Part shown: one piece after another, positions 2,936 to 54,925 of the stretch
Layout: the number at the start of each line of letters is the position of its first letter
Position numbering within the stretch: position 1 is the first letter of the stretch
NCBI RefSeq assembly: GCF_001194135.2
Contig: NW_026370633.1
Span: 1-62,169, forward strand
Direction of reading: 5' to 3'
Origin: Octopus bimaculoides
Lineage: Eukaryota
DNA length: 62,169 nucleotides
Position numbers and translations under genes: made by a program
Notes under the pieces: model-generated
The model's database searches: none
What the model saw: the letters and a program-made list of their open reading frames with translations, nothing else
What the model was told of the DNA's origin: nothing

Positions 2936-3250
2936 ATAGATGAGCTAAGAGAATAGTAAAAAGGGCCAATAACAAGCAGAAAACATTTTTATTTTCGCTC
3001 TTTTTATATATTTTTCCTTCTCTCTACCTTTTGAGCTACATTTCTTAATGTGACACAAAATATAAATAGAAGCATACTATTTTATTAATACATAGACATA
3101 TTAAACATTATGGTTTGTGAGTAACTACAGATCATGGAGATTTTTGGTAATTCATTGTTAAGATTAAACATTAAAAATAAAATGATGCATGTTATCTCAG
3201 TTAAATTATTAGCTCTTGTGCTAACATCAAAAGGGATTACAGAAGTGTTG

Positions 3251-6153: not shown

Positions 6154-6640
6154 CTTCTTATGTTCAACTTTTCTCTCAAGATACTTACGCTCTATCGAGT
6201 ATGCACACTGACATTACTCATCCATTGGAGCATACTGGCTTCATTCCTTGCGAGCTTACGCATGTCCTCAGCAGTCACGGCCCATGTTTCACTGCCATGT
6301 AGCATGGCTGTTCGTACACATGCATCATACAGTCTGCCTTTTACTCTGAGTGAGAGGCCCTTTGTCGCCAGCAGGGGTAAGAGCTCTCTGAACTTTGCCC
6401 AGGCTATTCTTATTCTAGTAGCTACACTTTCAGTGCACCCACCCCCACTACTAACTTGGTCACCCAGGTAGCAGAAGCTATCAACTATGTCTAGTTTTTC
6501 CCCCTGGAATGAGACAGAAGTTGTTTTCTGCATATTTACAGTGTTTATTGCACCTGAACATCTGCCGCACACAAAAACTAACTTCCTAGTTAACCTGCCA
6601 TTGATATTGCTACAAAAATTATGGGACCTCATAGATTCTG
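6154..6640 (-). mobile_element. RTE-clade LINE fragment, region C-terminal to the RT domain
   Basis: Translation VDSFCYLGDQVSSGGGC..TRIRIAWAKFRELLPLL..KGRLYDACVRTAMLHGSETW is typical of RTE/BovB-like ORFs; truncated by a gap. Confidence 0.85.
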
Positions 6641-24632: not shown

Positions 24633-24847
24633 CATGAGGGGGTGCTGAAAGGTCCCTGACTTTAAGAGTGTCACGAAAGACCTAGTTGGAGGTCCAGGGT
24701 TCTGAGTTCTTTTACAAACACTTTGGGACCACTGCAAATAAAGGTGTGAATCTGAGAGGGGTATATGTTGAATAAAATCGTAATTAACTGATCCTCCTGT
24801 ATTTTCGTTTACCCAAAGCCAGGAACTTCTTGGTATATACTCTTTGT
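24633..24847 (+). mobile_element. Mariner-derived MITE
   Basis: Left end catgagggggtgctgaaaggtccctgacttt, right end aaagccaggaactt..; retains KGVNLRGVYVE*, a mariner C-terminus-like peptide. Confidence 0.75.
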
Positions 24848-25026
24848 TGTGCAAGGATATATACAGAATATAACTGAATCAGCTGGTTATTCCAAAAGAG
24901 AGAAAGGGAAAGAAAAAGAGAGTGAAATAGAGAGAAAGAGAGAGGAGAAATAAAAAGCAAGAGAGAAAAGGAAGAGGAGATAAAGAGAGAGAGTAGTGCC
25001 ACGATTGAGCCCTGAAGCATACAAAC

Positions 25027-25173
25027 CTCATCTATAGGAGATTCTTCGATAAGTTTGGGAGCATCTGACGAAAGAATGCCATGCGTGGCCATCACGTAGA
25101 TTTTGTAAGCACCTCTGTTCTTCAAAGCCTCGGCTATTTTCACAAATGGTCTCACTTCATCCACCATATCGTC
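25027..25173 (-). CDS. PRPSAP: PRPSAP coding exon 8
   Basis: [49 protein letters not shown]; ttgcag / gtttgt; phase 0-0. Confidence 0.93.
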
Positions 25174-25254
25174 CTGCAATAATACACAACATAAAGATGT
25201 CAGAGAATTAACAAAAAACAATTAACGAATAAATGTTTGTTTTGTTAGTCAACC

Positions 25255-35996: not shown

Positions 35997-36375
35997 AGTG
36001 ATTTGAGGGAAATTTGGCTGCTGTATTTAACAGATTAATTGACCACATACAGGTCAAGACAGTGATTTGAAGGAAATTTTGCTGCTATTTTTAGCAGGTC
36101 AAATTACCACATACAGGTCAAGGCAGTGATTTGAGGAAAATTTTGCTGCTATTTTTAGCAGAATTAAGTTACTACATACAGGCCAAGACTGAGTGATAAG
36201 AGAGCAATTTTGCTTCTATTTTTAGCAGATTAAGTTACCACATACAGGTCAAGACAGGGATTCATGGGAAATTTGGCTGCTATTTCTAGCAAATTAAGTT
36301 ACCACATACAGGTCAAGACAGTGATTTGAGGGCAATTTGGCTGTTATTTTTAGCAGATTAAATTACCACATACAG
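35997..36375. repeat. ~64-bp x6 tandem array, continuing as degenerate units to ~37500
   Basis: gtgatttgagggaaatttggctgct..cagattaa..accacatacaggtcaagaca near 35998, 36062, 36126, 36193, 36257 and 36321. Confidence 0.88.
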
Positions 36376-37651
36376 GATCCCTCATTTGGCTATTGTGTCA
36401 AGCTTGATCAAGTTGATCCTATCATCAAAAGACTTTCTGCCCATGACCATCCAGGTTATTACTACCAACAGACCATGGTATATCTAGGAGTACATTGTCT
36501 CAACGTGCTCAGGTTTCCATGTTTCTGATAGACGAGAGGCAGCAGATTGATCCAACGGAGAACTTACTGCTGTTACTTTTTAGCCCTAGGTTGGAACCAC
36601 TTAAGAAGACCTACAATCAAAAAACAATCCAGATATGACCATCACCATTTGTCTAGGTATATTATCTAATGTGTCCTTCGCTTCCTTTTTTTTAAAGACT
36701 AGTGGTTGGAGAGACTTAGCTGCTTTTTCTAACCAACCTTGACATGACCACCATCATTTGTCTAAGTACATCTAGGACTACACTTAAATCAGTAGTGACT
36801 GAAAAGAGATTTGGCTGTAATTTCTAGCGAATCGATCAGCCAATCCAGCTGTGACCATCACTATTTGTTTAGATGTATCTAGGACTACATTGTCAAATGT
36901 GACCTTCCTTTTTCTAAAGACAGTAGTAATTTGAGAAAGATTTTGGCTGCTATTTCTAACCAGTTGATCAGATAATCCAGCTACGACCATCACCACTTGT
37001 CTAGGGATATCTGGGACTACATTATCAAATACGACCTATTTTATGAAATGGGAGAGTGTAGCTTAAGGTAGTTTTAGCTGCTGTTTCTAGCAGGCCAAGC
37101 AACCACAGAAAGAGACTTCCTTTCTGGCTCAACTTTTGGTGTTTAACTGTGACTGAGCAGACCTATGATCAAAAGCTTTCCAACCACGACCACCCTGTGT
37201 AGCTTTTCTTTCAGGCATTGTATACCTAAGAATACATTAATCAAATGTGTCCTTTGTTTTTATCAGACAGTAAGGTGTAAGTTCAAAGAGATTTAGTTGC
37301 TATTTTTAGCACACTGAGCAACCATATAGGAGCTGTGATAGTTTTGTTATTGTTTAGCCCGGGGTCAACCAAAGGAGACAGACTTATGATGCATGGCATG
37401 CCAGCCATGCGTATCCTATCAGGACTCACATTGCCTGATGCACCAAGAATGGTAGGACGAGACTCAAAGGAGATTCAGCTGCTATTTCTAGCAGGACAAG
37501 AGACCACACTGGATTTGGCAGTGATGGTAGGTGTAGCAGTGGGTGGTGGTGGTGGTGGTGGTGGCATTGATGATGCCCACACTCCACTCCACCTGTACGA
37601 CATACTATGTGCCCACATGTGCACCCCTTGCCACCGCCTGTCCACCAGGTG

Positions 37652-40600
37652 TCAGTTGCTCCCAACGACGATGTCGTACCCGGCCTCTTGCGCCTCCCTC
37701 CTGACTCTGCCCCCAGCCCCGCCTACCATGTCCATCTCCATCATCATCATCATCATCAGCGAATGGGTGCGCATGTGACGACTGAGGGTCCTCGACTCGG
37801 TGAAAGTCTGGCTGCAGTAGACGCACCGGTACGGCTTCTCGCCGGTGTGCGTGCGCACGTGCTTGGTGAGGTTGCTGGAATCGGAGAAACGCTTCTGGCA
37901 GAAGTTGCACGAGAAGAGCTTCTCGCCCGTGTGAATACGGATGTGCTTGGTGAGGTTGTCCGACCGGGAGAACCATTTGTGACAGTGCGGGCAAGGGAAA
38001 GGCTTAAGACCAGCGTGGACCTTCAGGTGACGTTTCAGATGACTCGGTCTGGTGAACATTTTACGACATTCATACTGGGGGCAAGTGTATTGCTTCACGG
38101 TGGACTGAGCACCACTGTGGCGGGGCAGCTGCTGCTGTTTCCTCTGCAGAGCCTTTATTAAGCTTGTGGTCGTTGAAGGTGCAATAAGGTCAGCTGGCAT
38201 CATAGCTGTTGCTGTTGTTGATGCGGTTTGCTGATCTTGTTGTTGTTGTTGTGGCCAGTGACGCTTCGTTGTGTCAGCATCAAAAGAAGGTTTATCCATC
38301 TGAAGTCCACAGTTGCGTGCAATGATGTCGATGGCAGAGGTATTTGCGGCTTGACCTTTGTCAGCAAAGGAAGCGAGATTCAAAGTGTGATTTAGGCTGT
38401 TCAACAGAAACGGCTGACCACCAGAAGAGGGAGAATTTGAACGGTAGCTGATTTCGTCAGCAGGTATGGAAGGAAATGAAGATAAGGGTAACGATGACGA
38501 TAATAATTCATGGTGATCGTCATTAAGGTCGGAAAATGTTACCTTCCGATCAGCATTGTTGTCTAATTGATCAGTGAAAACATTGCCGAGGAAACGAGAA
38601 GCATTGTGCTTACTCTTAAGGGACAAATCCCTTTCAATTAGCATTTCCCTGACATTATTCTGGGCCTGGAGTTGATTACCAGACAATAAGGATGCTAGCT
38701 CATCAGTGTTAGATATCGCTTCGGCAAACTTGGACAAGTCTTCGGTCTTAATTTTGGCATTGATTGGAACCATTGCCGAGCAGTCAGAGTCTGTGGCAAG
38801 TTCTGGTTCCACTTTAATGTAAGGTTTCGGAAAATCCAGATTATTGTCAGCTGGCTGAAGATAAGACAAAAGGGACAAAGAGTTTGGTAGGGGCTGGCTA
38901 AGATTGTCTTTCGAGGTCCTGTTTTCCTGGTTGAGTTCCTTGCAGTTAACAGCGTCCATTGATCCTGTAGGAGTCACTTTTGCGGTCATCAGAGACGACT
39001 GTTTGTTACCACCGTGCATTGTATTGTTACCGTCATGTTGTATGCATTGGTCATTGTTATAAGACGAGGTGTTGTCCGGGCGGTCAGCCATGATGAGGTC
39101 AGCAGCCACTTGGTCCGACAAATTCTGTGACTTCCTTTCAGCAGCGTCGACAGAGATGTGGTTGTCAATGTCCTCGTAGTCTTCACAGATGCCTGCTTCG
39201 TTCACCCCGGCACTTAAGGTCATGGTGACATCGGACGGAAGACAATCCATGTTTGTTGTCGCTGCAGGCTTCCATGCCGCAGTCACCGAGTGGTGAAGGA
39301 GCTCGTCGCACCATTTATCTCCCTTTTGCAGAAGCAGTTGCAGAGTCTCGTCGCTGAGGGAGCTGAGAAAATCAAGCATTGCATCGCGGAACTGTCCGTC
39401 ATTTTGGTTCGACTCCCATTGAGACGGAGGAAATTTGTTAGCCCTAGAGACATCTCCATTGCTGTTGTCAACCTCAAACCCACCCTCGGGCAATGACGAC
39501 ACCAATATATCGCTTGCGCAGGGTTGAGACATCTCCTCCTCCTCCTCCTCCTCCTCCTCCTCCTCGAGTTTCACATTCACGCTCTCAAAGACGTCCTTCA
39601 GATCTTCGGTCTGTTTCATTATTACGTTATCAGCGTGATGCGTGTTGGTGGAGCCAGTAGGAACTACCGTCATTGTGAACCCTAAATTTTTCGTGCTGTC
39701 CCTGTAGTTAGAACCATCTGACATCAAAGGAACACCACCATCACCATCACCATCATCATCATCATCATCGGAAAGAGACATTGCAGAATTAGAATTTGAA
39801 TCCGAAATACAAATGACATTGTTGGTTTTGCATTTCTGGTCTGCAACAAGGGTCGATTCGGGACCACCGTTGCCACCAGAGAAATAATTCTTATTCCGGA
39901 ACTCGACAAACTCATCAAAAAGTAGAAATTCTTGAATGCATTTCTCAGCCTCAGGTTGTTTGTCAGGGACCATTGCGGTTCCTTTCCGAAAATTTCCGTT
40001 CCCATCATAGTAAGAATTCGATGGTTCCTGATCTGCGTTGCTGTAAAATCCTGCGACGTCAGTGTGGTGGGCATCTTTTGGATTTCGGGTTGTATTAAGC
40101 AGGTCATAAGAGAGACGAACGCCTTGGGATTTGAAACTGATGTCTTTGAGTCCATCGATGGTATTCTCAGAGGAAGAAAACTTGAGGTCAATATTTTTAA
40201 GTTCTTCGGCGGCATCGATGGCAGATGGGAATTTGAAGTTGATGTCTTTCAGTTCTTCGTCATCGAGAGCGGAAGGAAATACAAAATTCTCATTCAGGGA
40301 AACTGTACCAGCTAAGAGCTCACCATTATCAGAAGAGGCTGACCTCTGGAATGGTTCGGAAGGGTTAAGACTTCCATCCTCGACGACATCTTTGCCCTCT
40401 GCAACTACCACCATGGGTCTTTCTGTGGTGTCAACCTCCTGTTTGATATCAGCCCTACTAATACCCCCGACAGAACCACAACTGTTTCCCGCTTCAAACT
40501 GACCCCTCCCCGGTGGTATCTCACGTACATGAGCAGCGAGGGAAGGGATGAGAGGCGCACCGCCGTCTCCACCCCTCCATTGAAACAGCTCCATCATTGA

Positions 40601-43600
40601 GCCAGAGGTGGTGGGGGTACGATAGCCATCGTCTCCTTGTCCGTCAGGTTCTGGTGTCTTCGGTTCCTGTTTCATGGCACTACCATCAGGCAGTAGAAAT
40701 TCTTGCTTCACAGCCAAAGACAAGTTCTCTTGGAAAGGGTCAACCAAGGATTTCCTGGTAAAATTCTCTGCGGACGATTCCTGAAAATCGCTATTGTTGT
40801 TGTTGTTGTTGTCATTTATTGTGCTGTCACTGTTGTAGTTTTTATTATTATTATTGCTACAGCTGTTGACATTAATGGTGGTGGTGGTGGTGGTTGTTGT
40901 GGTACTAGCAACAGTGGTGACCATATTGTTCCTTGGAGCACTGACAAGACTGCTGCTTCCATCTGCTGTACGTAGCTCATCTCCACGGTTACTGCGGTCG
41001 TGCACGTCGTCCGGTTCGCAACATATTTCGGCCGTTGTTTCACCTTGTCTTTGCACCTGACCATTGGGGGAAGACACAGACAGAACCAACGCTGCCCGTT
41101 CTGAGCCTGGGTCCTGACCAGAACTGGCTGGACCAAACTCAGTGCCCGGTGACGAAGAAGCTGAAGGCAGTGGGGATGAAAACTGCAAATGCCAAGGTGA
41201 TGACGATGACAATGATGACCGCTCACTAGATACGACACTTGATCTAGTTTTTGCTTCGCTCTGCAGCACATCCAACTGATTCTGCAACGGTAACTTTGCA
41301 GAGTCTTCTGAGATAGACTCGGTCAAATTATGGCTAGCAGAAGTAATATTGGAGTCACTTGAGCCACTGGTGTTAGTCACAGCACTGGTCAAGCTCTCAG
41401 TCTCAGAGACAGCACTGGACAATATATCGGTTTTGGAGACAGAACTAATTGAATTGTGGTGACCAAGGGGAATATTGGTGTTACTTGAGCCATCACTATT
41501 AGTGATGGCAGTGGTCAAGTTTTCAGTATCAGAGACAGTACTGGACAGTATGCTGTTGGCTTTTGAAACAGAATTGGTTAAATCGTTTCCATTGGTCAAG
41601 CTGTTGCCATTGGAAACAATATTATCGAAGCTGTTGACATCGGAGATGGCACTGTCCATCTCATCGTCATGGGAGACGGCGCTGGTCAGCTCATTGCCAC
41701 CAAGGGAAACGGTATCAGTGAAGGTTTTAGCGTTGCTGCTACTGCTGCCTCGACAGTCTCTGAGGAGGTGGTCATTAAACACGTTGAGGTCGTGGATGAG
41801 ATTTCCGCACTCTTTACACCTGAACATCTCGCCTGTCGTGTGTAGTTTCAGGTGACGTGTTAGCTCCTCCACACCGGAGAAGAATATCTGACACCGGGAG
41901 CAATGAAAGAGACGGTTTCTCGGGTGATGGTCACTATCATGAAGACGACGATGTGTACGATGATGTTGTTGGTGCTGCTGGCTCTGATGACTACTATCAT
42001 TTTCATTATCGTTATCGTTATCATCATCACTGTTGTTAATATAAGGATGAAGGTGATTGTGATGATGATGAGGACTATAGCGGTCACTTGTATTAGGATT
42101 ATTATTGCTGTTGTAGAGATACTCATCCATTTCAGTTTCCATCTCCACTTTGAACCCACCGACAACTGTCAGGGTAGCGTTTCCTACAGCCTCATCTTCC
42201 TCTTCCTGATTCCCATCAACATCTTCTTGTTCTAATACTTCTTGCTTGATGTAATCAAGCATAAAGGGACTGACATTACAAAGGGATTGGCAATTAGCAT
42301 CATCTGGTATGGCAAGTGAAGATGCACTACCTGTCTTGCTGCACATGGTTCCTGAGCTAGTTTCTCTGGAAAAGGACATTGGTGAACATATGTTCTGTTG
42401 AGAGGAAATTGGGGCAGTTTGACCATGTTCCGACGAACCAGTCTGTTTGTCCTCTCCCACGTCATCATCCTCTTTCACCTCCTCCTCCATCTCTTCATCA
42501 TCTTCCTCTCCGTCTTTTATAGTTGGCGAGGCAGCAGTGATGGTGGTTATATGGAACCTGTAGATGTGGTTGGCAAGGGTGAACTCATCGAGAAATACCT
42601 TCCCACACTGGCGGCACCGGTGTAACTTGTCTCGCAGCTGCTTCTTGAAACGCTGCAACAGGGCAGTAGGCCCAGAGCCAAATGTCTTCTTCAGAGCTGA
42701 GGTTGCATTCTTAGCAGATGACGAGACAGATTGCAATGAAAGTGATAACAATGATGATGATGATGATGGTGGTGACGGTGGTATCACAGAAATGGTAGTA
42801 GTAGCAGTAGTAGTAATATTAGTAGTACCAATGGCAGCCCTAGCTACAGCAGCAGAAATGCTTCTTAAATCTGTTGTTGATGAGGACGGCACTGAACAAG
42901 GTAGCGAAGGAAGATGTTGTTGTTGTTGTGGTGGTGGTGGTGGTGACGGGGATGTTGTTTCTGACTGAAGTAGTGTCTTCAACTGCTGCGGAGACTGGCC
43001 AAGTTTAGCATGTGTGAGTAAATGGCGACACAGCGCGATCGAGCTGTCAAAAGACTTTGAGCAGATCATGCACCGAAAGGGAGACAACTCTGTAGACGGG
43101 GACAGCAATGGTGACCTGCTCTCCTGCTGCTCTTGGTTTTGCTGTTGCTGTCGTGACAGGAAGCAGGGGTGTTCATAATTGCTATTGTCGTCATCTCCTC
43201 CGCTGTCATGGTGTGCTGCTTCCAGCAAGAAACGTTTATGGTTGTCATGTTTTCTGTCATTATCATCGTCATCATCTCTTTCACTGCTTCCTGTGGACGT
43301 GTGCGGTGGAAAGCTGTTGTCTTGGTTACTGTTGCTGTGGCTACCACTCCTGCTACTATTGCTCTTATTGGATGCAGTTGCACCATCTGCAGCTGCTGCC
43401 GCTGCGCGGGCATGCGTGCGCAAGTGCTTGGTGAGGTTGCTGGAATCGGTGAAACGCTTCGTGCAGATGCTGCACGAGTACCGCTTGTCGCCTGTGTGAA
43501 TGCGCACGTGCTTGACGAGGTTGTCCGACCGGGAGAACGCTCGGTCGCAGTATGCGCATCTGAACGGCTTAATGCCGGCATGAATCTTCAGATGTCGGTT

Positions 43601-46600
43601 CAACTGTGTCGACTTGGAGAAATGCTTCGAGCACACCGAGCAGGCATGCACTAGGTGGCGCCAGCGGAGATGTTGGGTGAGCTCGAGGGCCGACGAGAAC
43701 GAAACCGGGAATGAAGATGCAGAGGGCGATGCTGACCCCTTGCAGTACGAACAGGAAAATTCTTTATTTCCATTGCCTTTCACACTTCCAGCTTTCTTAT
43801 CAGCTGCAGCGGAACTGGTCAAATCTGCAGCGGAAGAACTAGTAGTAGTAGTAGGAGGAGTCAGAGTAATAGTAGTAGTAGTAGTAGTAGTAGATGTAGC
43901 AGAGTCAGAAACAACAGTATCAGGAACTACTGAGATTACAGGAGAATTAGAATCTACAGCAACAGCAGTAGAAGTAGTATTGAGTGCAGCGGAGGTAGCA
44001 GTAGAGATGGCAGCAGAAGCAGTTGTGGATGAAGTGTGTGTAGCAGCGGTACTGCCTCTACTGCTACTAGTGGTAACAATAGTAGTTGTAGTGCTACTAC
44101 AGCTGTTATTACTGCTACTATTACAACTACTAGTGCTCTGGTGGCTGTTATTATCATGATCATCATATTCAGAAGTGGTAGTAGTAGCAGTGGTAGTAGT
44201 AATAGTGGTGGGAGCAGCAGTTGTGGTCCTAGTTTCGGCGTTAACAACTTCAACGTCCTGGGTCTCTTTGACACTGGAACCTTTTGTCAAGAGACCAATA
44301 GCTGAGTTGTCTCCCTTGCTGAAGTCTTTCGACGACGCAGTGTGGACGTGTGATGGAGAAATTCGTATTGAGTCGTCGTGGTTCGCTGAGCGATCGTGTG
44401 GTGGCGTCAACGCTTCCTTCTTCACCGTGACTTTCGCTTCTGAATCCATGGCGACACGGGAAACGGGCAGCGTCGGTGTTTGTGCCGATGGCGTTGAGGG
44501 AAGCGACACTGATGTCGAAGTCTCCTTCTGCTGTGTCGTACTAAAATTTCCCTTATCAGTGGGTGAGGCCCTATTGGAAACTTCCATACGGCTCACAGAA
44601 CCAAACCCTGCCACTTGGCTATGATCACCGCCATCATCTGCCACAGAGACTAGCGTCTCCCTTGTCTCTGTCTTCAAAACAACACCCCGGGGCACTGCAA
44701 CAGAGCTATACTGATCGACCACACTGGTACCAACATCATCATCATCATTATTAACATCATCAGTAAGAACTATAGTGCTTTTAGCAAAGATTTTGGATTT
44801 GCTTGAAGAAATCTGATCCACAGACATCAAATTCTGGAAGGATCTACCGGTAGATATACCACCGACGGCCCCTTCTTTTCTTTTTCGGTCTCGACAGATT
44901 TGGGGTTCTTTCACTTCTTGTTTGATGACCCTTCGAAAGTCACACCCTGATACTTTACCGATATTGCTCAGGATTTTGGCGACAATTGCATCGACTTCAA
45001 CAGTGGAATCGTTACTACTAATTACCGTTAATTTCCCCGTTTCTTCTTCTTCTTCTTGCTGTCCTTGTGTTCCTTTTTCCTTGCGGAGAGTTGAACCAAA
45101 ATCCTTACCGGCGCTGTGTTTGTTTCCTTGCCGTCTTTTCTTCTTCACCATTCCGAGCGCATCAAAAACTTCTCGGTCACCATTTTGTGACAACCCTGTT
45201 AAATCCTCTGCGCTTAATGTAATGCCATCCAAAACATTCAGCCCATGCTGCAGCAACATTGAATTCCCTGGATCTTTGATGCTGTCCCGTTTCTTGTTAT
45301 CCTCCATGTCATTATCCTCGATCTCACTATCAGACAGTATTATCTCCTGTTTCAGTTTTGGCGCCGATGGATTTACGACCATCACCGAGGAAACGGGGTT
45401 CCCTGCCGACAACTGACGACGACGATCAGGATTTAGTCTCTGGTTATCTTGTGTCATCGTGCGATGGTCTAACTGTGGTTGGCCGCCAACAAGTCTCGCG
45501 GAGAGCAATCTCTGCTGCATGAGATCAGTCTTATTCTTACTTCGGTTTGGTCTCTGGTTCCGATCTTGCGCCGGACATTGTCTCCGATGCTTCGACAGTT
45601 GGACACTGGAACTGAAGGACTCTCCACAGTTCTTACACTCAAGGCGTCGTCGGATGTGACATTTCAGGTGATCCGCCAATGCTAAAGCCTTCGGAAACGC
45701 TGCCTTGCAATAGAGGCACTCATATGGGAGGCCTGCCGATCCTACGTCAAGGTCTTTCAGGCTTGTTGCTCCGCCGACCGTTGATGTTTGGAATAAATCC
45801 ATACTACCATGGTTTTCCGACTGCCTCCTCCTTACATGGATCTTTGACACATCCTCGCTACTGTTTCCCAACAATGTGTTTATACGATTAACTTGTCTCA
45901 GATTATCATCATCATATTCATTCTTTATGCGGATCGGGGCCACGTCCTCTCCCTCTTCTGCACAGTCGTCTACGTGTCCCTTGACGTGCATTTCTAACGA
46001 GGTTCTGGAGAAAAATTGCATGCCACAATAACTGCACTGGAACGTTATCGGAAAACGGTTACGGGCCCTGCCTAAACTGTTCACGTGATGCAGTCTGTCG
46101 ATGGAATGACTTGAGGTGGGCCTAGATGAACCAGAAGCTTTCCGGTTGATTGGATTGGGTGAAAGTGTGGTGGCATTCGCAGAATATGAAAGTACTTGAT
46201 CAAAATCAAAACTGACATGGTTCGCTGATCTTGTTCTGTTCCGTTTTGACTTCATCTTACTAATATCACTACTACTACTACTACTACTACTGCTACTAGT
46301 GTTATTACTATTGTACCCCTGGATGTTTTCATTGGTTTGCGACAGTTGTCTTATGATGTGATCAGTTCTGCTGAAGACATCCGTTGCTATGGGCAGCGTC
46401 GTGTTCTTCGGTGGGGCCTTTACGATCTCCTCGTCTTCTCCGTCGGACCATTGCAAAAGATTCCCTGTATACGAAGACTTGCTTGCAGCACCTCCTGCAT
46501 CTGGTCCTAGCAATCGCGCCTCATTTGAGGGTTCACCAATTGCGCTGAGAATCCCCCTTGCGGTTGCCTCTGACTTACTAACCGACGGCAGCCGTGACCG

Positions 46601-47359
46601 AGGGTGCATTTCCAGTTGCGATTGCAACTGCGCACCTTGCAGATTTGACACTGCTGTTGTCGCGGTGGTGGTGGTCATCGTTGGAAATGACCTCTCTTTA
46701 TTGATAATATGGAGGATGTTTTGCATTTGGAGTCGTCTCTGCACATCTGCAGCAACAGCAGCTGCGTCACTCAGTGACAACAGCGACGCCGTGTCGCCAC
46801 TGACGTCCATGTTGCTTCCACGACAGTCATGACCGCCAACGGAGAGAGTGTCACGGAGTGCAACTTCGCCACTTCTGTTATCAGTACTGCTACCACCGCC
46901 GCCGCTACCACCATTGCCATCGTCGGCGCCAACAGTGCTGCCATTTCCGTCGGACACGCCGTGGGTCAACAGGTGGCGCCGGAGGGTGTCCGACTTGCGA
47001 AACGTCTTCGAGCAGAGCGTGCACGTGTAGCGCCTCGTGCCCGCATGCGTGCGCATGTGCTTGCTCAGGTTGCTCGAGTCGGTGAAGCGCTTCAGGCAGA
47101 ACTCGCAGCCGTAGCGCTTGTCACCTGTGTGAATGCGGACGTGCTTGATCAGGTTGTCCGACCGGGAGAACGACTTGTGGCAGTACTTGCACTCGAACGG
47201 CCGGAGACCAGAGTGAATCTTCAAATGCCTGGCCAGATGGCTGTACCGGTCGAAGTCCTTGCTGCAGTACTGGCATTTGAACTGACGCACCTTCGAAGAA
47301 ACAATGGCATCGTTAGTGCGTTCAATGCCAGATACTGCACTCTTAGACAGGGAATCCAT
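37652..47359 (-). CDS. Giant single-exon-ORF C2H2 zinc-finger protein (~3235 aa, ~19 fingers in three homologous clusters plus scattered fingers)
   Basis: Uninterrupted 9.7-kb ORF in a stop-rich genome; clusters at 46961-47281, 43412-43648 and 37763-38089 with HTGEK/DK-type linkers. First in-frame ATG is 47359; the 47413 start in the track is a TTG. Confidence 0.9.
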   Translation of the reverse strand: MDSLSKSAVSGIERTNDAIVSSKVRQFKCQYCSKDFDRYSHLARHLKIHSGLRPFECKYCHKSFSRSDNLIKHVRIHTGDKRYGCEFCLKRFTDSSNLSKHMRTHAGTRRYTCTLCSKTFRKSDTLRRHLLTHGVSDGNGSTVGADDGNGGSGGGGSSTDNRSGEVALRDTLSVGGHDCRGSNMDVSGDTASLLSLSDAAAVAADVQRRLQMQNILHIINKERSFPTMTTTTATTAVSNLQGAQLQSQLEMHPRSRLPSVSKSEATARGILSAIGEPSNEARLLGPDAGGAASKSSYTGNLLQWSDGEDEEIVKAPPKNTTLPIATDVFSRTDHIIRQLSQTNENIQGYNSNNTSSSSSSSSSSDISKMKSKRNRTRSANHVSFDFDQVLSYSANATTLSPNPINRKASGSSRPTSSHSIDRLHHVNSLGRARNRFPITFQCSYCGMQFFSRTSLEMHVKGHVDDCAEEGEDVAPIRIKNEYDDDNLRQVNRINTLLGNSSEDVSKIHVRRRQSENHGSMDLFQTSTVGGATSLKDLDVGSAGLPYECLYCKAAFPKALALADHLKCHIRRRLECKNCGESFSSSVQLSKHRRQCPAQDRNQRPNRSKNKTDLMQQRLLSARLVGGQPQLDHRTMTQDNQRLNPDRRRQLSAGNPVSSVMVVNPSAPKLKQEIILSDSEIEDNDMEDNKKRDSIKDPGNSMLLQHGLNVLDGITLSAEDLTGLSQNGDREVFDALGMVKKKRRQGNKHSAGKDFGSTLRKEKGTQGQQEEEEETGKLTVISSNDSTVEVDAIVAKILSNIGKVSGCDFRRVIKQEVKEPQICRDRKRKEGAVGGISTGRSFQNLMSVDQISSSKSKIFAKSTIVLTDDVNNDDDDVGTSVVDQYSSVAVPRGVVLKTETRETLVSVADDGGDHSQVAGFGSVSRMEVSNRASPTDKGNFSTTQQKETSTSVSLPSTPSAQTPTLPVSRVAMDSEAKVTVKKEALTPPHDRSANHDDSIRISPSHVHTASSKDFSKGDNSAIGLLTKGSSVKETQDVEVVNAETRTTTAAPTTITTTTATTTTSEYDDHDNNSHQSTSSCNSSSNNSCSSTTTTIVTTSSSRGSTAATHTSSTTASAAISTATSAALNTTSTAVAVDSNSPVISVVPDTVVSDSATSTTTTTTTITLTPPTTTTSSSAADLTSSAAADKKAGSVKGNGNKEFSCSYCKGSASPSASSFPVSFSSALELTQHLRWRHLVHACSVCSKHFSKSTQLNRHLKIHAGIKPFRCAYCDRAFSRSDNLVKHVRIHTGDKRYSCSICTKRFTDSSNLTKHLRTHARAAAAAADGATASNKSNSSRSGSHSNSNQDNSFPPHTSTGSSERDDDDDNDRKHDNHKRFLLEAAHHDSGGDDDNSNYEHPCFLSRQQQQNQEQQESRSPLLSPSTELSPFRCMICSKSFDSSIALCRHLLTHAKLGQSPQQLKTLLQSETTSPSPPPPPQQQQHLPSLPCSVPSSSTTDLRSISAAVARAAIGTTNITTTATTTISVIPPSPPSSSSSLLSLSLQSVSSSAKNATSALKKTFGSGPTALLQRFKKQLRDKLHRCRQCGKVFLDEFTLANHIYRFHITTITAASPTIKDGEEDDEEMEEEVKEDDDVGEDKQTGSSEHGQTAPISSQQNICSPMSFSRETSSGTMCSKTGSASSLAIPDDANCQSLCNVSPFMLDYIKQEVLEQEDVDGNQEEEDEAVGNATLTVVGGFKVEMETEMDEYLYNSNNNPNTSDRYSPHHHHNHLHPYINNSDDDNDNDNENDSSHQSQQHQQHHRTHRRLHDSDHHPRNRLFHCSRCQIFFSGVEELTRHLKLHTTGEMFRCKECGNLIHDLNVFNDHLLRDCRGSSSSNAKTFTDTVSLGGNELTSAVSHDDEMDSAISDVNSFDNIVSNGNSLTNGNDLTNSVSKANSILSSTVSDTENLTTAITNSDGSSNTNIPLGHHNSISSVSKTDILSSAVSETESLTSAVTNTSGSSDSNITSASHNLTESISEDSAKLPLQNQLDVLQSEAKTRSSVVSSERSSLSSSSPWHLQFSSPLPSASSSPGTEFGPASSGQDPGSERAALVLSVSSPNGQVQRQGETTAEICCEPDDVHDRSNRGDELRTADGSSSLVSAPRNNMVTTVASTTTTTTTTTINVNSCSNNNNKNYNSDSTINDNNNNNNSDFQESSAENFTRKSLVDPFQENLSLAVKQEFLLPDGSAMKQEPKTPEPDGQGDDGYRTPTTSGSMMELFQWRGGDGGAPLIPSLAAHVREIPPGRGQFEAGNSCGSVGGISRADIKQEVDTTERPMVVVAEGKDVVEDGSLNPSEPFQRSASSDNGELLAGTVSLNENFVFPSALDDEELKDINFKFPSAIDAAEELKNIDLKFSSSENTIDGLKDISFKSQGVRLSYDLLNTTRNPKDAHHTDVAGFYSNADQEPSNSYYDGNGNFRKGTAMVPDKQPEAEKCIQEFLLFDEFVEFRNKNYFSGGNGGPESTLVADQKCKTNNVICISDSNSNSAMSLSDDDDDDGDGDGGVPLMSDGSNYRDSTKNLGFTMTVVPTGSTNTHHADNVIMKQTEDLKDVFESVNVKLEEEEEEEEEEEMSQPCASDILVSSLPEGGFEVDNSNGDVSRANKFPPSQWESNQNDGQFRDAMLDFLSSLSDETLQLLLQKGDKWCDELLHHSVTAAWKPAATTNMDCLPSDVTMTLSAGVNEAGICEDYEDIDNHISVDAAERKSQNLSDQVAADLIMADRPDNTSSYNNDQCIQHDGNNTMHGGNKQSSLMTAKVTPTGSMDAVNCKELNQENRTSKDNLSQPLPNSLSLLSYLQPADNNLDFPKPYIKVEPELATDSDCSAMVPINAKIKTEDLSKFAEAISNTDELASLLSGNQLQAQNNVREMLIERDLSLKSKHNASRFLGNVFTDQLDNNADRKVTFSDLNDDHHELLSSSLPLSSFPSIPADEISYRSNSPSSGGQPFLLNSLNHTLNLASFADKGQAANTSAIDIIARNCGLQMDKPSFDADTTKRHWPQQQQQDQQTASTTATAMMPADLIAPSTTTSLIKALQRKQQQLPRHSGAQSTVKQYTCPQYECRKMFTRPSHLKRHLKVHAGLKPFPCPHCHKWFSRSDNLTKHIRIHTGEKLFSCNFCQKRFSDSSNLTKHVRTHTGEKPYRCVYCSQTFTESRTLSRHMRTHSLMMMMMMEMDMVGGAGGRVRREAQEAGYDIVVGSN

Positions 47360-47417
47360 TCCAATATATAATATATATATGTACAAATATAGTTTTGTAA
47401 TTATAAGATCCAATGAT

Positions 47418-53955: not shown

Positions 53956-54387
53956 CTTGCAACGATGAATGAATGATTGTTGATTCAATATGAAATATTC
54001 TCGTTGCAAAAACAGTATCTTTCTTTTCTTACTTTTCATTACAATCTTTAAGTTTTGATAGAATTTATTTAAATGCTGTTTGACCCGCAGACCTCAGTTT
54101 GGCCAGTCCTGCGTCTACGCTGACCGCACCGTTTCACAGACGTTGCTTTAAGACGCGTCACTAACTAGGTTAACTTGGTCGGGAGTGTTTGTGTAGTAAT
54201 CGACCGTGTAACAGCTTGTAATGGGTTACATTTTAGAACCAAAATACCCACAACGTTCTTACTACTGACTCATACTCATGTGCAATCACAAGACACAGAA
54301 AGGAGTAATTTGAATGAGATTTGGCTGCTATTTCGAGCAGGTCTATTGGCTGAGACATACATATATACATACATATAAGACAGCATG

Positions 54388-54925
54388 GTGTGATTTGAGG
54401 GAGATCTGGTTGCTATTTCTGTTAGGTCCAGCTACCATGGAGAGGCCTCCCTCATTGGCTCATACATATATACATAGATAAGAGAGTAGGGTGTGATTTG
54501 AGGGAGATTTGGTTGCTATTTCTACCAGGTCCAGCTACCATGTAGAGGTCTCCCTCATTGGCTCATACATACATATATACATAGATAAGAGAGTAGGGTG
54601 TGATTTGAGGGAGATTTGGTTGCTATTTCTGTGAGGTCCAGCTANNNNNNNNNNATAGATAAGAGAGTAGGGTGTGATTTGAGGGAGATTTGGTTGCTAT
54701 TTCTACCAGGTCCAGCTACCATGTAGAGGTCTCCCTCATTGGCTCATACATACATATATACATAGATAAGAGAGTAGGGTGTGATTTGAGGGAGATTTGG
54801 TTGCTATTTCTGTGAGGTCCAGCTACCATGTAGAGGCCTCCCTCATTGGCTCATACATTTTTACATAGATAAGAGAGTAGGGTGTGATTTGAGGGAGATT
54901 TGGCTGCTATTTCTAGCATAAAGTG
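54388..54925. repeat. 103-107-bp tandem array, about 6 copies
   Basis: gtgtgatttgagggagat at 54388, 54491, 54598, 54672 (after a 10-N gap), 54779 and 54882. Confidence 0.92.

What the first reader, a model, noticed from the sequence alone, without database searches (positions are those of the whole stretch)
37652..47359. Tri-valent zinc-finger architecture: the same DNA-reading module three times, ~1100 and ~1770 aa apart
Seen: clusters at the N-terminus, middle and C-terminus share the order H/Q-finger, RSDNLxK, DSSNLxK (plus a fourth T..R finger in clusters 1 and 3), while framework residues have diverged. Eight further single or paired fingers have non-canonical helices, some ending in C or with an insertion. 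The linkers are low-complexity. Known: expanded octopus C2H2 genes are described as tandem finger arrays, and multi-cluster proteins such as ZEB or HIVEP have two separated clusters. Inference: one polypeptide could bridge up to three copies of one site, acting as a looping, architectural or repeat-clustering factor. I do not recognise an orthologue.
Basis: partly seen in the sequence, partly recalled or inferred. Interest (0 to 1): 0.8.

Follow-up and report, generated by a model that had tools for sequence, protein, structure and literature searches.

The report
Octopus protein with tripled DNA-reading module
One intron-free octopus gene encodes a 3,235-residue zinc-finger protein that carries the same four-finger DNA-reading module three times, far apart, with identical base-contacting residues, so it probably grips two or three copies of one short DNA motif at once; no relative was found outside the genus Octopus.

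Summary
Window 37652-47359 (minus strand) is one uninterrupted 3,235-codon ORF of Octopus bimaculoides. It has 19 C2H2-type fingers: 11 in three clusters (aa 27-133, 1238-1316, 3091-3199) and 8 solitary or paired degenerate ones.

The clusters are in-register copies of one module. Its second and third fingers (RSDNLxK, DSSNLxK) keep all 8 base-contact residues in all three copies, while only 11 of 27 framework and linker positions are kept. Against the Octopus sinensis orthologue the clusters have dN/dS 0.011; the linkers have 0.27. The triplication predates the split of the two species.

The solitary finger at aa 1428 is probably the detached fourth finger of the middle copy. The linkers look disordered but are not junk: they hold 13 SUMO-consensus motifs (1.8 expected) and two strongly constrained islands.

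No orthologue turned up outside Octopus, but proteins of about 200-1,800 aa could not be searched with the clusters.

Best reading: a lineage-restricted, multivalent sequence-specific DNA-binding regulator. It works like ZEB or HIVEP, whose two separated clusters read similar sites, but it has three clusters and is not a member of either family. Loop or bridge formation remains untested inference.

The parts
37652..47359 (-). Complete single-exon coding sequence: 3,235 codons plus the stop codon at 37652-37654, ATG at 47357-47359.
   Evidence: The O. sinensis orthologue has the same unspliced ORF (isoform X1, 3,250 aa). Whole-gene dN/dS is 0.23.
46961..47281 (-). Cluster 1, aa 27-133: four C2H2 fingers with helices RYSHLARH, RSDNLIKH, DSSNLSKH, KSDTLRRH.
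   Evidence: No amino-acid change against O. sinensis: 0 nonsynonymous and 17 synonymous differences. GC3 is 0.90.
45974..46042 (-). Solitary finger, aa 440-462.
   Evidence: No nonsynonymous change against O. sinensis. No clear relation to the module fingers.
45575..45724 (-). Finger pair, aa 546-595. The second finger ends in Cys (CCHC type).
   Evidence: dN/dS is 0.06. The second finger matches module finger 2 at 7 of 17 variable positions, which is only a hint of common origin.
43655..43759 (-). Finger with a 12-residue insertion between the Cys pair and the His pair, aa 1201-1235. It sits directly before cluster 2.
   Evidence: dN/dS is 0.26.
43412..43648 (-). Cluster 2, aa 1238-1316: three fingers with helices KSTQLNRH, RSDNLVKH, DSSNLTKH.
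   Evidence: dN/dS is 0.021. GC3 is 0.80.
43079..43411 (-). Low-complexity stretch of 111 aa (Ala-, Ser/Asn-, Asp- and Gln-rich), aa 1317-1427, between cluster 2 and finger aa 1428.
   Evidence: It is the least conserved part of the protein (54% identity in aa 1351-1400). Read here as an insertion that split the middle module.
43010..43078 (-). Finger aa 1428-1450 (…CSKSF…RHLLTH), probably the detached fourth finger of the middle module.
   Evidence: Its best match among all fingers of the protein is cluster-1 finger 4, at 13 of 23 positions. Only 6 of 2,277 control fingers match it that well. It evolves faster than the clusters (dN/dS 0.68 over 23 codons).
42551..42622 (-). Solitary finger with H-x4-H spacing, aa 1580-1603.
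   Evidence: dN/dS is 0.23.
41753..41908 (-). Finger pair, aa 1818-1869. The second finger is degenerate and ends in Cys.
   Evidence: dN/dS is 0.15. The first finger ends RHLKLH, like the module's finger 1, which is a weak resemblance (5 of 17).
39860..40339 (-). Constrained non-finger island, aa 2341-2500. It contains three short repeats: ELKDINFKF, ELKNIDLKF and GLKDISFKS.
   Evidence: 94-98% identical to O. sinensis. dN/dS is 0.06. No Pfam family. Structure prediction gave low confidence.
39260..39439 (-). Constrained non-finger island, aa 2641-2700, predicted to form a helical hairpin (…FRDAMLDFLSSLSDETLQLLLQKGDKWCDELLHH…).
   Evidence: dN/dS is 0.02. It holds the only helices of the single-sequence AlphaFold2 model, at pLDDT about 50. 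No Pfam family.
37763..38089 (-). Cluster 3, aa 3091-3199: four fingers with helices RPSHLKRH (CX4C knuckle), RSDNLTKH, DSSNLTKH, ESRTLSRH.
   Evidence: dN/dS is 0.009. GC3 is 0.76.

Best explanation
This is a real, conserved protein-coding gene of Octopus. It encodes a very large nuclear C2H2 zinc-finger protein that arose by intragenic triplication of a four-finger DNA-binding module.

Selection has kept the base-reading residues of fingers 2 and 3 identical in all three copies. By the standard finger recognition code:
- RSDNLxK reads GAG;
- DSSNLxK reads GAC;
- finger 1 reads GGG in copies 1 and 3, and GAG in copy 2.

Each copy should therefore read a site built on the core 5'-GACGAGG(G/A)G-3'. 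Copies 1 and 3 would read three further bases through their differing fourth fingers.

The copies are joined by flexible, mostly disordered linkers of about 1,100 and 1,770 residues. These carry SUMO-acceptor motifs, SUMO-interaction-like motifs, basic nuclear-localisation-like patches and two constrained islands that probably dock partner proteins.

The protein most likely acts as a multivalent, sequence-specific transcription or chromatin regulator. It would gain affinity and selectivity by occupying two or three related sites at once, with loose requirements on their spacing and orientation, as ZEB and HIVEP proteins do with two clusters.

Shown: the anatomy, the homology of the copies, the selection pattern and the restricted distribution. 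Inferred: the DNA motif, simultaneous binding, SUMO regulation, and a repressor or scaffold role.
For: - Anatomy and Pfam hits.
- In-register homology of the copies.
- Similarity far above the background of other fingers.
- Contact residues 8/8 invariant against 11/27 framework and linker positions, p = 0.003.
- Between O. bimaculoides and O. sinensis, pooled clusters have 60 synonymous but only 3 nonsynonymous differences (dN/dS 0.011). The other fingers have 0.15 and the non-finger sequence 0.27.
- DNA of each cluster groups with its orthologue (91-94% identity), not with its paralogues (76-81%). The triplication is therefore older than the species split and has not been homogenised since.
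- All inter-finger linkers have the canonical five-residue xGxxx length.
- 13 psi-K-x-E motifs against 1.8 ± 1.3 in shuffles, 12 of them conserved.
- Conserved SUMO-interaction-like and basic patches.
- Same gene order (a PRPS-like gene downstream) in both species.
- Precedents for two separated clusters reading similar sites with flexible spacing: ZEB (PMC8304685) and HIVEP/ZAS (PMC3048431).
Against: - There is no binding, expression or localisation data.
- The motif comes from the recognition code, which is only approximate for natural fingers.
- Finger 1 of the middle copy and the fourth fingers differ, so the three sites need not be interchangeable.
- Nothing shows that the clusters bind at the same time, or in trans rather than to neighbouring sites.
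- C2H2 fingers can also bind RNA or protein.
- The disorder of the linkers rests on composition and on one low-confidence single-sequence model.
Confidence: 0.6

Rival explanations
1. The copies have divided the work. They read related but distinct longer sites because fingers 1 and 4 differ, or only one or two of them bind DNA while the rest bind RNA or proteins. The protein is then an ordinary multi-domain transcription factor with no bridging and no avidity for repeated sites.
For: - Finger 1 contact residues differ in the middle copy, and the fourth fingers differ or are detached.
- The detached finger aa 1428 evolves faster (dN/dS 0.68 over 23 codons).
- From general knowledge, other multi-cluster proteins use different clusters for DNA and for partners (for example ZNF423/OAZ).
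Against: All eight contact residues of fingers 2 and 3 have been kept identical in three copies while 16 of the 27 framework and linker positions changed. That is hard to explain unless all three still read the same bases. All three clusters are equally constrained between species.
Confidence: 0.25
2. It is a repeat or transposon binder. The three identical readers evolved to coat or cluster a tandem or dispersed repeat family carrying the motif, analogous to satellite-binding or KRAB-type zinc-finger repressors.
For: - Multivalency suits repeated targets.
- Octopus genomes are repeat-rich and have expanded C2H2 families linked to transposons in the literature (PMC10547256 was listed but not read in detail).
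- The many SUMO motifs fit silencing factors.
Against: - Contact residues are frozen between species (dN/dS 0.011), whereas transposon-chasing fingers usually change their contact residues quickly.
- The gene is a single-copy syntenic orthologue, not part of an array.
- No repeat in the window carries the predicted motif. Its few matches lie mostly in the gene's own GC-rich exon.
Confidence: 0.1
3. It is an artefact: three neighbouring small zinc-finger genes fused by a chance open frame or mis-assembly, or a decaying pseudogene.
For: The window has many assembly gaps (8,953 N). The linkers are low in complexity.
Against: - No N lies inside the ORF.
- A 9.7-kb frame stays open in two independently assembled species, and every length difference between them keeps the frame.
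- The linkers have dN/dS 0.27, not about 1.
- RefSeq models in O. sinensis span the whole ORF.
Confidence: 0.03

Closest known systems
ZEB1/ZEB2 (deltaEF1/SIP1; Drosophila zfh-1)
   Same: One polypeptide with widely separated N- and C-terminal C2H2 clusters that read the same kind of short site (CACCT(G)). Both clusters are needed, the spacing and orientation of the half-sites are variable, and the long flexible linker carries partner-docking motifs (PMC8304685).
   Different: - ZEB has two clusters, not three.
- ZEB has a homeodomain-like domain and CtBP-binding PxDLS motifs. Neither is present here.
- The finger sequences are unrelated beyond the generic fold, and no ZEB protein appeared among the hits.
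- This protein is three times longer.
HIVEP1-3 / ZAS / Schnurri
   Same: Very large proteins (over 250 kDa). Two widely separated finger units each bind the same consensus on their own, next to acidic and Ser/Thr-rich tracts (PMC3048431).
   Different: - ZAS units are finger pairs reading GGGGNNNNCC-type sites. Here the units have three or four fingers with different helices.
- HIVEP proteins match only at E 1e-9 to 1e-12 over 2% of the query, which is generic finger similarity.
- There are three units here, not two.
Expanded tandem-array C2H2 genes of coleoid cephalopods
   Same: Same domain type, same genomes, canonical linkers (PMC12513265; examples P0152, P0004 and P0006).
   Different: - Those proteins carry long arrays: 28-34 fingers in the three examples. 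Their contact residues vary, with only 0-1 of 142-196 unit pairs sharing all eight.
- This gene has three dispersed copies with identical core contacts.
- It has huge non-finger linkers.
- It is a single syntenic orthologue under strong constraint.
Engineered Zif268-type finger modules (RSDNLVR for GAG, DPGNLVR for GAC)
   Same: From general knowledge of the recognition code and the Barbas module sets: Arg at -1, Asn at 3 and a basic residue at 6 specify GAG, and Asp at -1, Asn at 3 and a basic residue at 6 specify GAC. Asp at position 2 favours G or T as the next base, which agrees with the G-starting triplet predicted for finger 1.
   Different: Those are designed fingers with Arg at position 6. 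Here Lys is at position 6 in a natural framework. The prediction was not computed or measured here.

Membership tests
Classical C2H2 (Krüppel/TFIIIA-type) zinc-finger DNA-binding arrays | CX2-4C-X12-HX3-5H ligand spacing with a conserved Phe and Leu core. | tested here: met
   16 strict matches, including all 11 clustered fingers. Pfam zf-C2H2 scores 213.9 bits against a cut-off of 25.2.
Classical C2H2 (Krüppel/TFIIIA-type) zinc-finger DNA-binding arrays | Consecutive fingers joined by five-residue TGEKP-like linkers, the hallmark of DNA-binding arrays. | tested here: met
   The linkers are SGLRP, TGDKR, AGTRR / AGIKP, TGDKR / AGLKP, TGEKL, TGEKP. All have canonical length with Gly at position 2.
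Classical C2H2 (Krüppel/TFIIIA-type) zinc-finger DNA-binding arrays | Sequence-specific DNA binding. | not testable with these tools
   Only a recognition-code prediction was possible (GACGAGG(G/A)G).
ZEB family | Homeodomain-like domain between the N- and C-terminal clusters. | tested here: not met
   Pfam finds only zinc-finger families in the whole protein.
ZEB family | CtBP-interaction motifs (PxDLS type). | tested here: not met
   No match to P[ILVM][DN]L[ST].
ZEB family | Sequence orthology of the clusters. | tested here: not met
   No ZEB protein among the hits. This is limited by the search tool's apparent restriction to proteins of similar length.
HIVEP/ZAS/Schnurri family | Two ZAS domains, each a finger pair plus an acidic tract plus a Ser/Thr-rich tract. 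| tested here: not met
   The units here have three or four fingers and there are three of them. Acidic and Ser-rich tracts do follow cluster 2, but that is compositional resemblance only.
HIVEP/ZAS/Schnurri family | Sequence similarity beyond generic fingers. | tested here: not met
   HIVEP1 and HIVEP3 hits score 52-62 bits over 2% of the query.
Cephalopod expanded tandem-array C2H2 genes | Long uninterrupted finger arrays with diversified contact residues, belonging to lineage-specific paralogue groups. | tested here: not met
   The fingers form three short clusters plus solitary fingers. The core contacts are identical in the clusters. No close paralogue appeared.
Teleost ZNF1035, ZNF236-like, ZNF407 and RREB1-like proteins (names that appeared among the hits) | Shared cluster layout or shared helices with this protein. 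| tested here: not met
   The fetched sequences have no RSDNL plus DSSNL pair and no collinear similarity. The best local alignments cover 2-5% of the query.

The most novel reading that the evidence does not exclude
An Octopus-lineage invention: a trivalent 'molecular staple'. Its three equivalent readers, spaced by very long flexible tethers under SUMO control, would gather two or three distant GACGAGG-type sites into one hub. That would be a sequence-specific chromatin-looping or clustering factor built on a different principle from CTCF or YY1: multivalency within one chain instead of dimerisation or cohesin blocking.
Probability: 0.12. Interest if true: 0.75.

Novelty: new variant of a known kind. 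Interest (0 to 1): 0.45.

Why it matters
Proteins with two separated finger clusters that read similar sites (ZEB, HIVEP) are the known natural examples of intramolecular multivalent DNA recognition. A protein that has kept three copies of the same reader frozen while everything around them drifted is a cleaner and more extreme case.

If all three copies bind, it offers two things:
- a natural model for how tether length and valency set the site-spacing tolerance and avidity of a transcription factor;
- a candidate lineage-specific genome organiser in cephalopods, whose genome architecture and C2H2 repertoire are already known to be unusual.

It is also a well-defined example of gene growth by internal domain triplication plus expansion of low-complexity sequence. 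If only one cluster binds DNA, it is just another large orphan zinc-finger protein.

Tried and rejected
1. **Whole-protein homology search, repeated with low-complexity runs masked.** Only the O. sinensis orthologue was collinear. All other hits were generic poly-finger proteins. The fetched candidates (Haliotis, scallop, Mactra, sea urchin, teleost ZNF1035 and others) lack the module.
2. **Profile of the three clusters.** The tool returned only proteins of 202 aa or less, at 30-51% identity. It served as a background but not for finding an ancestor. The tool seems to return only proteins of length similar to the query, so proteins of about 200-1,800 aa were never searched with the clusters.
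3. **Exhaustive HMMER with non-finger aa 2200-3085.** The only hit was a partial model of the same protein.
4. **Degenerate DNA pattern for the two-helix core against JGI metagenome contigs.** It found 0 hits. The pattern is valid, matching exactly the three clusters in the window. This is a weak negative because that collection is not made of animal genomes.
5. **PDB sequence search.** Only generic finger arrays came up (ZNF568, Aart, PRDM9, CTCF and others). It was not informative for orthology.
6. **Dating the triplication from synonymous divergence.** Rejected. Paralogous clusters share as many codons (21-29 of 33) as orthologues do (25-26). Cluster codon usage alone predicts 19.3, because of extreme GC3 bias, so the apparent dS of 0.3-0.57 is not a clock.
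7. **Recent gene conversion between clusters.** Rejected for the time since the species split.
8. **Extra degenerate module copies at aa 546-595 and 1818-1869.** Only weak resemblance was found and no claim is made.
9. **AlphaFold2 on aa 2330-2720.** Mean pLDDT was 34, so no fold search was run.
10. **Motif counts in the window.** The small excess is explained by the GC-rich exon itself and is not evidence.
11. **Literature search for the locus and accession names.** Nothing was found.
Full report
**What is there**

The interval is one uninterrupted open reading frame on the minus strand, ORF 37652..47413. The first ATG is at 47359 and the stop at 37652-37654. It encodes 3,235 residues.

An exact-sequence look-up places the window on contig LGKD02075763.1 of assembly GCA_001194135.2, Octopus bimaculoides. 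There the same 9,708 nt are annotated as a single coding exon. The next gene downstream on the same strand is a phosphoribosyl-pyrophosphate-synthetase-like gene. The exon is a GC-rich island (0.44-0.48) in AT-rich, gap-ridden surroundings. No N lies inside it.

A strict C2H2 pattern finds 16 fingers. Three variants bring the total to 19: two that end in Cys and one with a 12-residue insertion. Eleven fingers form three clusters, at aa 27-133, 1238-1316 and 3091-3199. Eight are solitary or paired. Pfam reports only C2H2 families.

Aligned, the clusters are 62-64% identical overall and 69-76% identical over fingers 2-3. Three controls show this is more than chance:
- 844 two-finger units from 205 other zinc-finger proteins, themselves retrieved by similarity to this protein, average 40% identity (sd 7) and never exceed 61%.
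- None of those proteins has the RSDNL..H + DSSNL..H pair.
- In five other giant poly-finger proteins, including octopus ones, only 0-1 of 142-409 unit pairs share all eight base-contact residues. Here all three pairs do.

**The copies are in register, and probably all had four fingers**

A finger-by-finger matrix over the 17 non-structural positions pairs F1 with F1 (6-7 identities), F2 with F2 (9-11), F3 with F3 (10-11) and F4 with F4 (7). Unrelated fingers score 0-4.

The solitary finger at aa 1428-1450 (…CSKSF…RHLLTH) has cluster-1 finger 4 (…CSKTF…RHLLTH) as its best partner, at 13 of 23 positions. Only 6 of 2,277 control fingers match it that well. I therefore read it as the fourth finger of the middle copy, separated from finger 3 by a 111-residue low-complexity insertion (aa 1317-1427). 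That stretch is the least conserved part of the protein. This is moderately supported, not proven.

Resemblances of the pairs at aa 546-595 and 1818-1869 to F1-F2 are weak. I make no claim for them.

**Selection**

The O. sinensis orthologue (LOC115225209) is "uncharacterized". Isoform X1 is the same unspliced ORF at 3,250 aa. Isoform X2 splices after …GGAGGR to a distant exon. The orthologue is 85% identical to the window protein and lies next to the same neighbour gene.

Codon-aligned Nei-Gojobori estimates:

| Region | dS | dN | dN/dS |
|---|---|---|---|
| Whole gene | 0.27 | 0.062 | 0.23 |
| Three clusters pooled | 0.40 | 0.004 | 0.011 |
| Other eight fingers | 0.33 | 0.050 | 0.15 |
| Non-finger sequence | 0.25 | 0.069 | 0.27 |
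| Island aa 2341-2500 | 0.32 | 0.019 | 0.06 |
| Island aa 2641-2700 | 0.68 | 0.014 | 0.02 |

The pooled clusters show 60 synonymous and 3 nonsynonymous differences. So the ORF is a functional gene, the clusters are almost frozen, and the linkers are constrained too.

Among the three paralogous copies, all 8 base-contact positions (-1, 2, 3, 6 of fingers 2 and 3) are invariant. Only 11 of 27 framework and linker positions are (Fisher p = 0.003). Selection has therefore preserved what the fingers read, not merely that they fold.

**Age of the triplication**

At the DNA level each cluster is 91-94% identical to its orthologue and 76-81% identical to its paralogues. The triplication is therefore older than the split of the two species, and the copies have not been homogenised since.

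The apparent synonymous distance between copies (0.30-0.57) looked young, but it is not a usable clock:
- At the 33 codons with the same residue in all six sequences, paralogues share 21-29 codons and orthologues 25-26.
- Cluster codon usage alone predicts 19.3 shared codons.
- The clusters have GC3 of 0.76-0.90 against 0.50 for the gene.
- The twelve highest GC3 windows of the gene all lie in the clusters. The other constrained islands have GC3 of 0.42-0.58.

I have no explanation for this local codon bias. Translational-accuracy selection on finger codons, or a legacy of past GC-biased conversion between the copies, are possibilities.

**Distribution**

- Two searches with the whole protein, raw and with low-complexity runs masked, found only the O. 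sinensis orthologue as a collinear match. The other hits (teleost ZNF1035, ZNF236-like, RREB1-like, ZNF407, HIVEP) match generic fingers over 2-5% of the query and lack the module.
- An exhaustive HMMER scan of 1.84 billion representatives with the non-finger residues 2200-3085 returned only a partial model of the same protein.
- A degenerate DNA pattern for the two-helix core matches exactly the three clusters in the window and nothing in the metagenome collection.
- No paper mentions the locus.

Limits apply to these negatives:
- The word-indexed search appears to return only proteins of a length similar to the query. Proteins of about 200-1,800 aa, where a single-module ancestor would sit, were never searched with the clusters.
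- Other octopods more than 50% identical would be hidden inside the same representative cluster.

So "restricted to Octopus" is provisional. [quoted passage not shown] is better supported.

**How it most likely works**

What follows is inference from the standard recognition code for Zif268-type fingers, which is general knowledge and was neither computed nor measured here.
- RSDNLxK (Arg at -1, Asn at 3, Lys at 6) reads 5'-GAG.
- DSSNLxK (Asp at -1, Asn at 3, Lys at 6) reads 5'-GAC.
- Finger 1 reads GGG in copies 1 and 3 (R/H/R) and GAG in copy 2 (K/Q/R).
- Asp at position 2 of finger 2 favours a G-starting neighbouring triplet, which fits.

Arrays bind antiparallel, so each copy should read 5'-GACGAGG(G/A)G-3'. 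Copies 1 and 3 would read three further bases through fourth fingers that differ from each other. All inter-finger linkers have the canonical length for DNA-binding arrays.

The linkers are Ser/Thr/Asp/Asn-rich. The one segment tested was predicted with very low confidence, apart from a helical hairpin at about aa 2654-2694. The linkers nevertheless carry:
- 13 psi-K-x-E SUMO-acceptor motifs, against 1.8 ± 1.3 in shuffles (maximum 8 in 2,000), with 12 conserved;
- SUMO-interaction-like hydrophobic-acidic motifs (…EIILSDSEIEDND…, …VICISDSNS…DDDDDD…);
- two basic patches.

The best-supported model is therefore a multivalent, sequence-specific nuclear regulator. Its affinity and target choice would depend on two or three related sites within reach of long flexible tethers, and its activity would be tuned through SUMO-dependent partners.

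This is how ZEB proteins use their two clusters on two CACCT boxes of variable spacing and orientation (PMC8304685). HIVEP/ZAS proteins likewise carry two separated units that each bind the same consensus (PMC3048431).

Whether this protein bridges distant DNA (loops or hubs), or simply gains avidity on locally clustered sites, cannot be decided here.

**Membership**

It is a bona fide C2H2 array protein. It is not a ZEB: it has no homeodomain, no PxDLS motif and no sequence relation. It is not a HIVEP/ZAS protein: its units are not finger pairs and only generic similarity exists. It is not a typical member of the cephalopod tandem-array expansions: it has short dispersed clusters, frozen contacts and a single syntenic orthologue. 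It works like ZEB and HIVEP but does not belong to them.

**Verdict**

I rate it a new variant of a known kind, at moderate interest. The main open risk to novelty is an undetected mid-sized ancestor or orthologue in other molluscs.

Noticed in passing
window 46961-47281, 43412-43648, 37763-38089 (the three clusters): Third-codon GC is 0.76-0.90 in the clusters against 0.50 for the gene, and all 12 highest GC3 windows lie in them. Other equally constrained segments have 0.42-0.58. Synonymous divergence from O. sinensis is nevertheless higher in the clusters (0.40) than in the rest (0.25). Unexplained.
   Followed up: partly
window 37655-47359, linker regions (for example aa 478, 669, 812, 895, 979, 1704, 1736, 2217, 2229, 2305, 2596, 2848, 2870): There are 13 SUMO-consensus psi-K-x-E motifs, against 1.8 ± 1.3 expected from shuffles. 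Twelve are conserved in O. sinensis. There are also two hydrophobic-acidic SUMO-interaction-like motifs (aa ~672 and ~2515) and two basic patches (aa 739-743 and 825-828).
   Followed up: partly
window 39860-40339 (aa 2341-2500): The most conserved non-finger island contains three short tandem peptide repeats: ELKDINFKF, ELKNIDLKF and GLKDISFKS. It has no Pfam match and dN/dS 0.06.
   Followed up: partly
window 37704-37706 (after codon 3218, …GGAGGR|GT…): A GT follows this codon in both species. The O. sinensis RefSeq isoform X2 splices here to a distant exon, replacing the last 17 residues. The gene range of that model overlaps the neighbouring PRPS-like gene. I could not locate the alternative exon.
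   Followed up: partly
window 24784-25221 (-) and downwards from ~33307: A phosphoribosyl-pyrophosphate-synthetase-like gene lies on the same strand downstream (Pribosyl_synth, E = 5e-21 for one exon ORF). The same neighbour is present in O. sinensis, so gene order is conserved.
   Followed up: yes
window 35997-36376 and 54345-54915: Tandem repeats on either side of the gene (64-bp units downstream, 103-284-bp units upstream) share a core GTGATTTGAGGGA(A/G)ATTTGG(C/T)TGCTATTT in the same orientation. This is probably a common octopus repeat family.
   Followed up: no
L002 (O. sinensis) against the window, aa ~1150-1200: The linkers change length by in-frame expansion of short peptide repeats. 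For example, O. sinensis has about 8 copies of an ANLTSSAA-like unit where O. bimaculoides has about one. Cluster spacing differs by +41 and -28 residues between the species.
   Followed up: partly
window 6192-6632 (-): This 146-aa ORF looked to me like the C-terminal part of a retrotransposon reverse transcriptase, but it has no Pfam match at E ≤ 0.01. Unverified.
   Followed up: partly
whole window: 8,953 N sit in many assembly gaps outside the gene, typically flanked by TA/CATA microsatellites. They depress the apparent GC content in several 2-kb bins.
   Followed up: no
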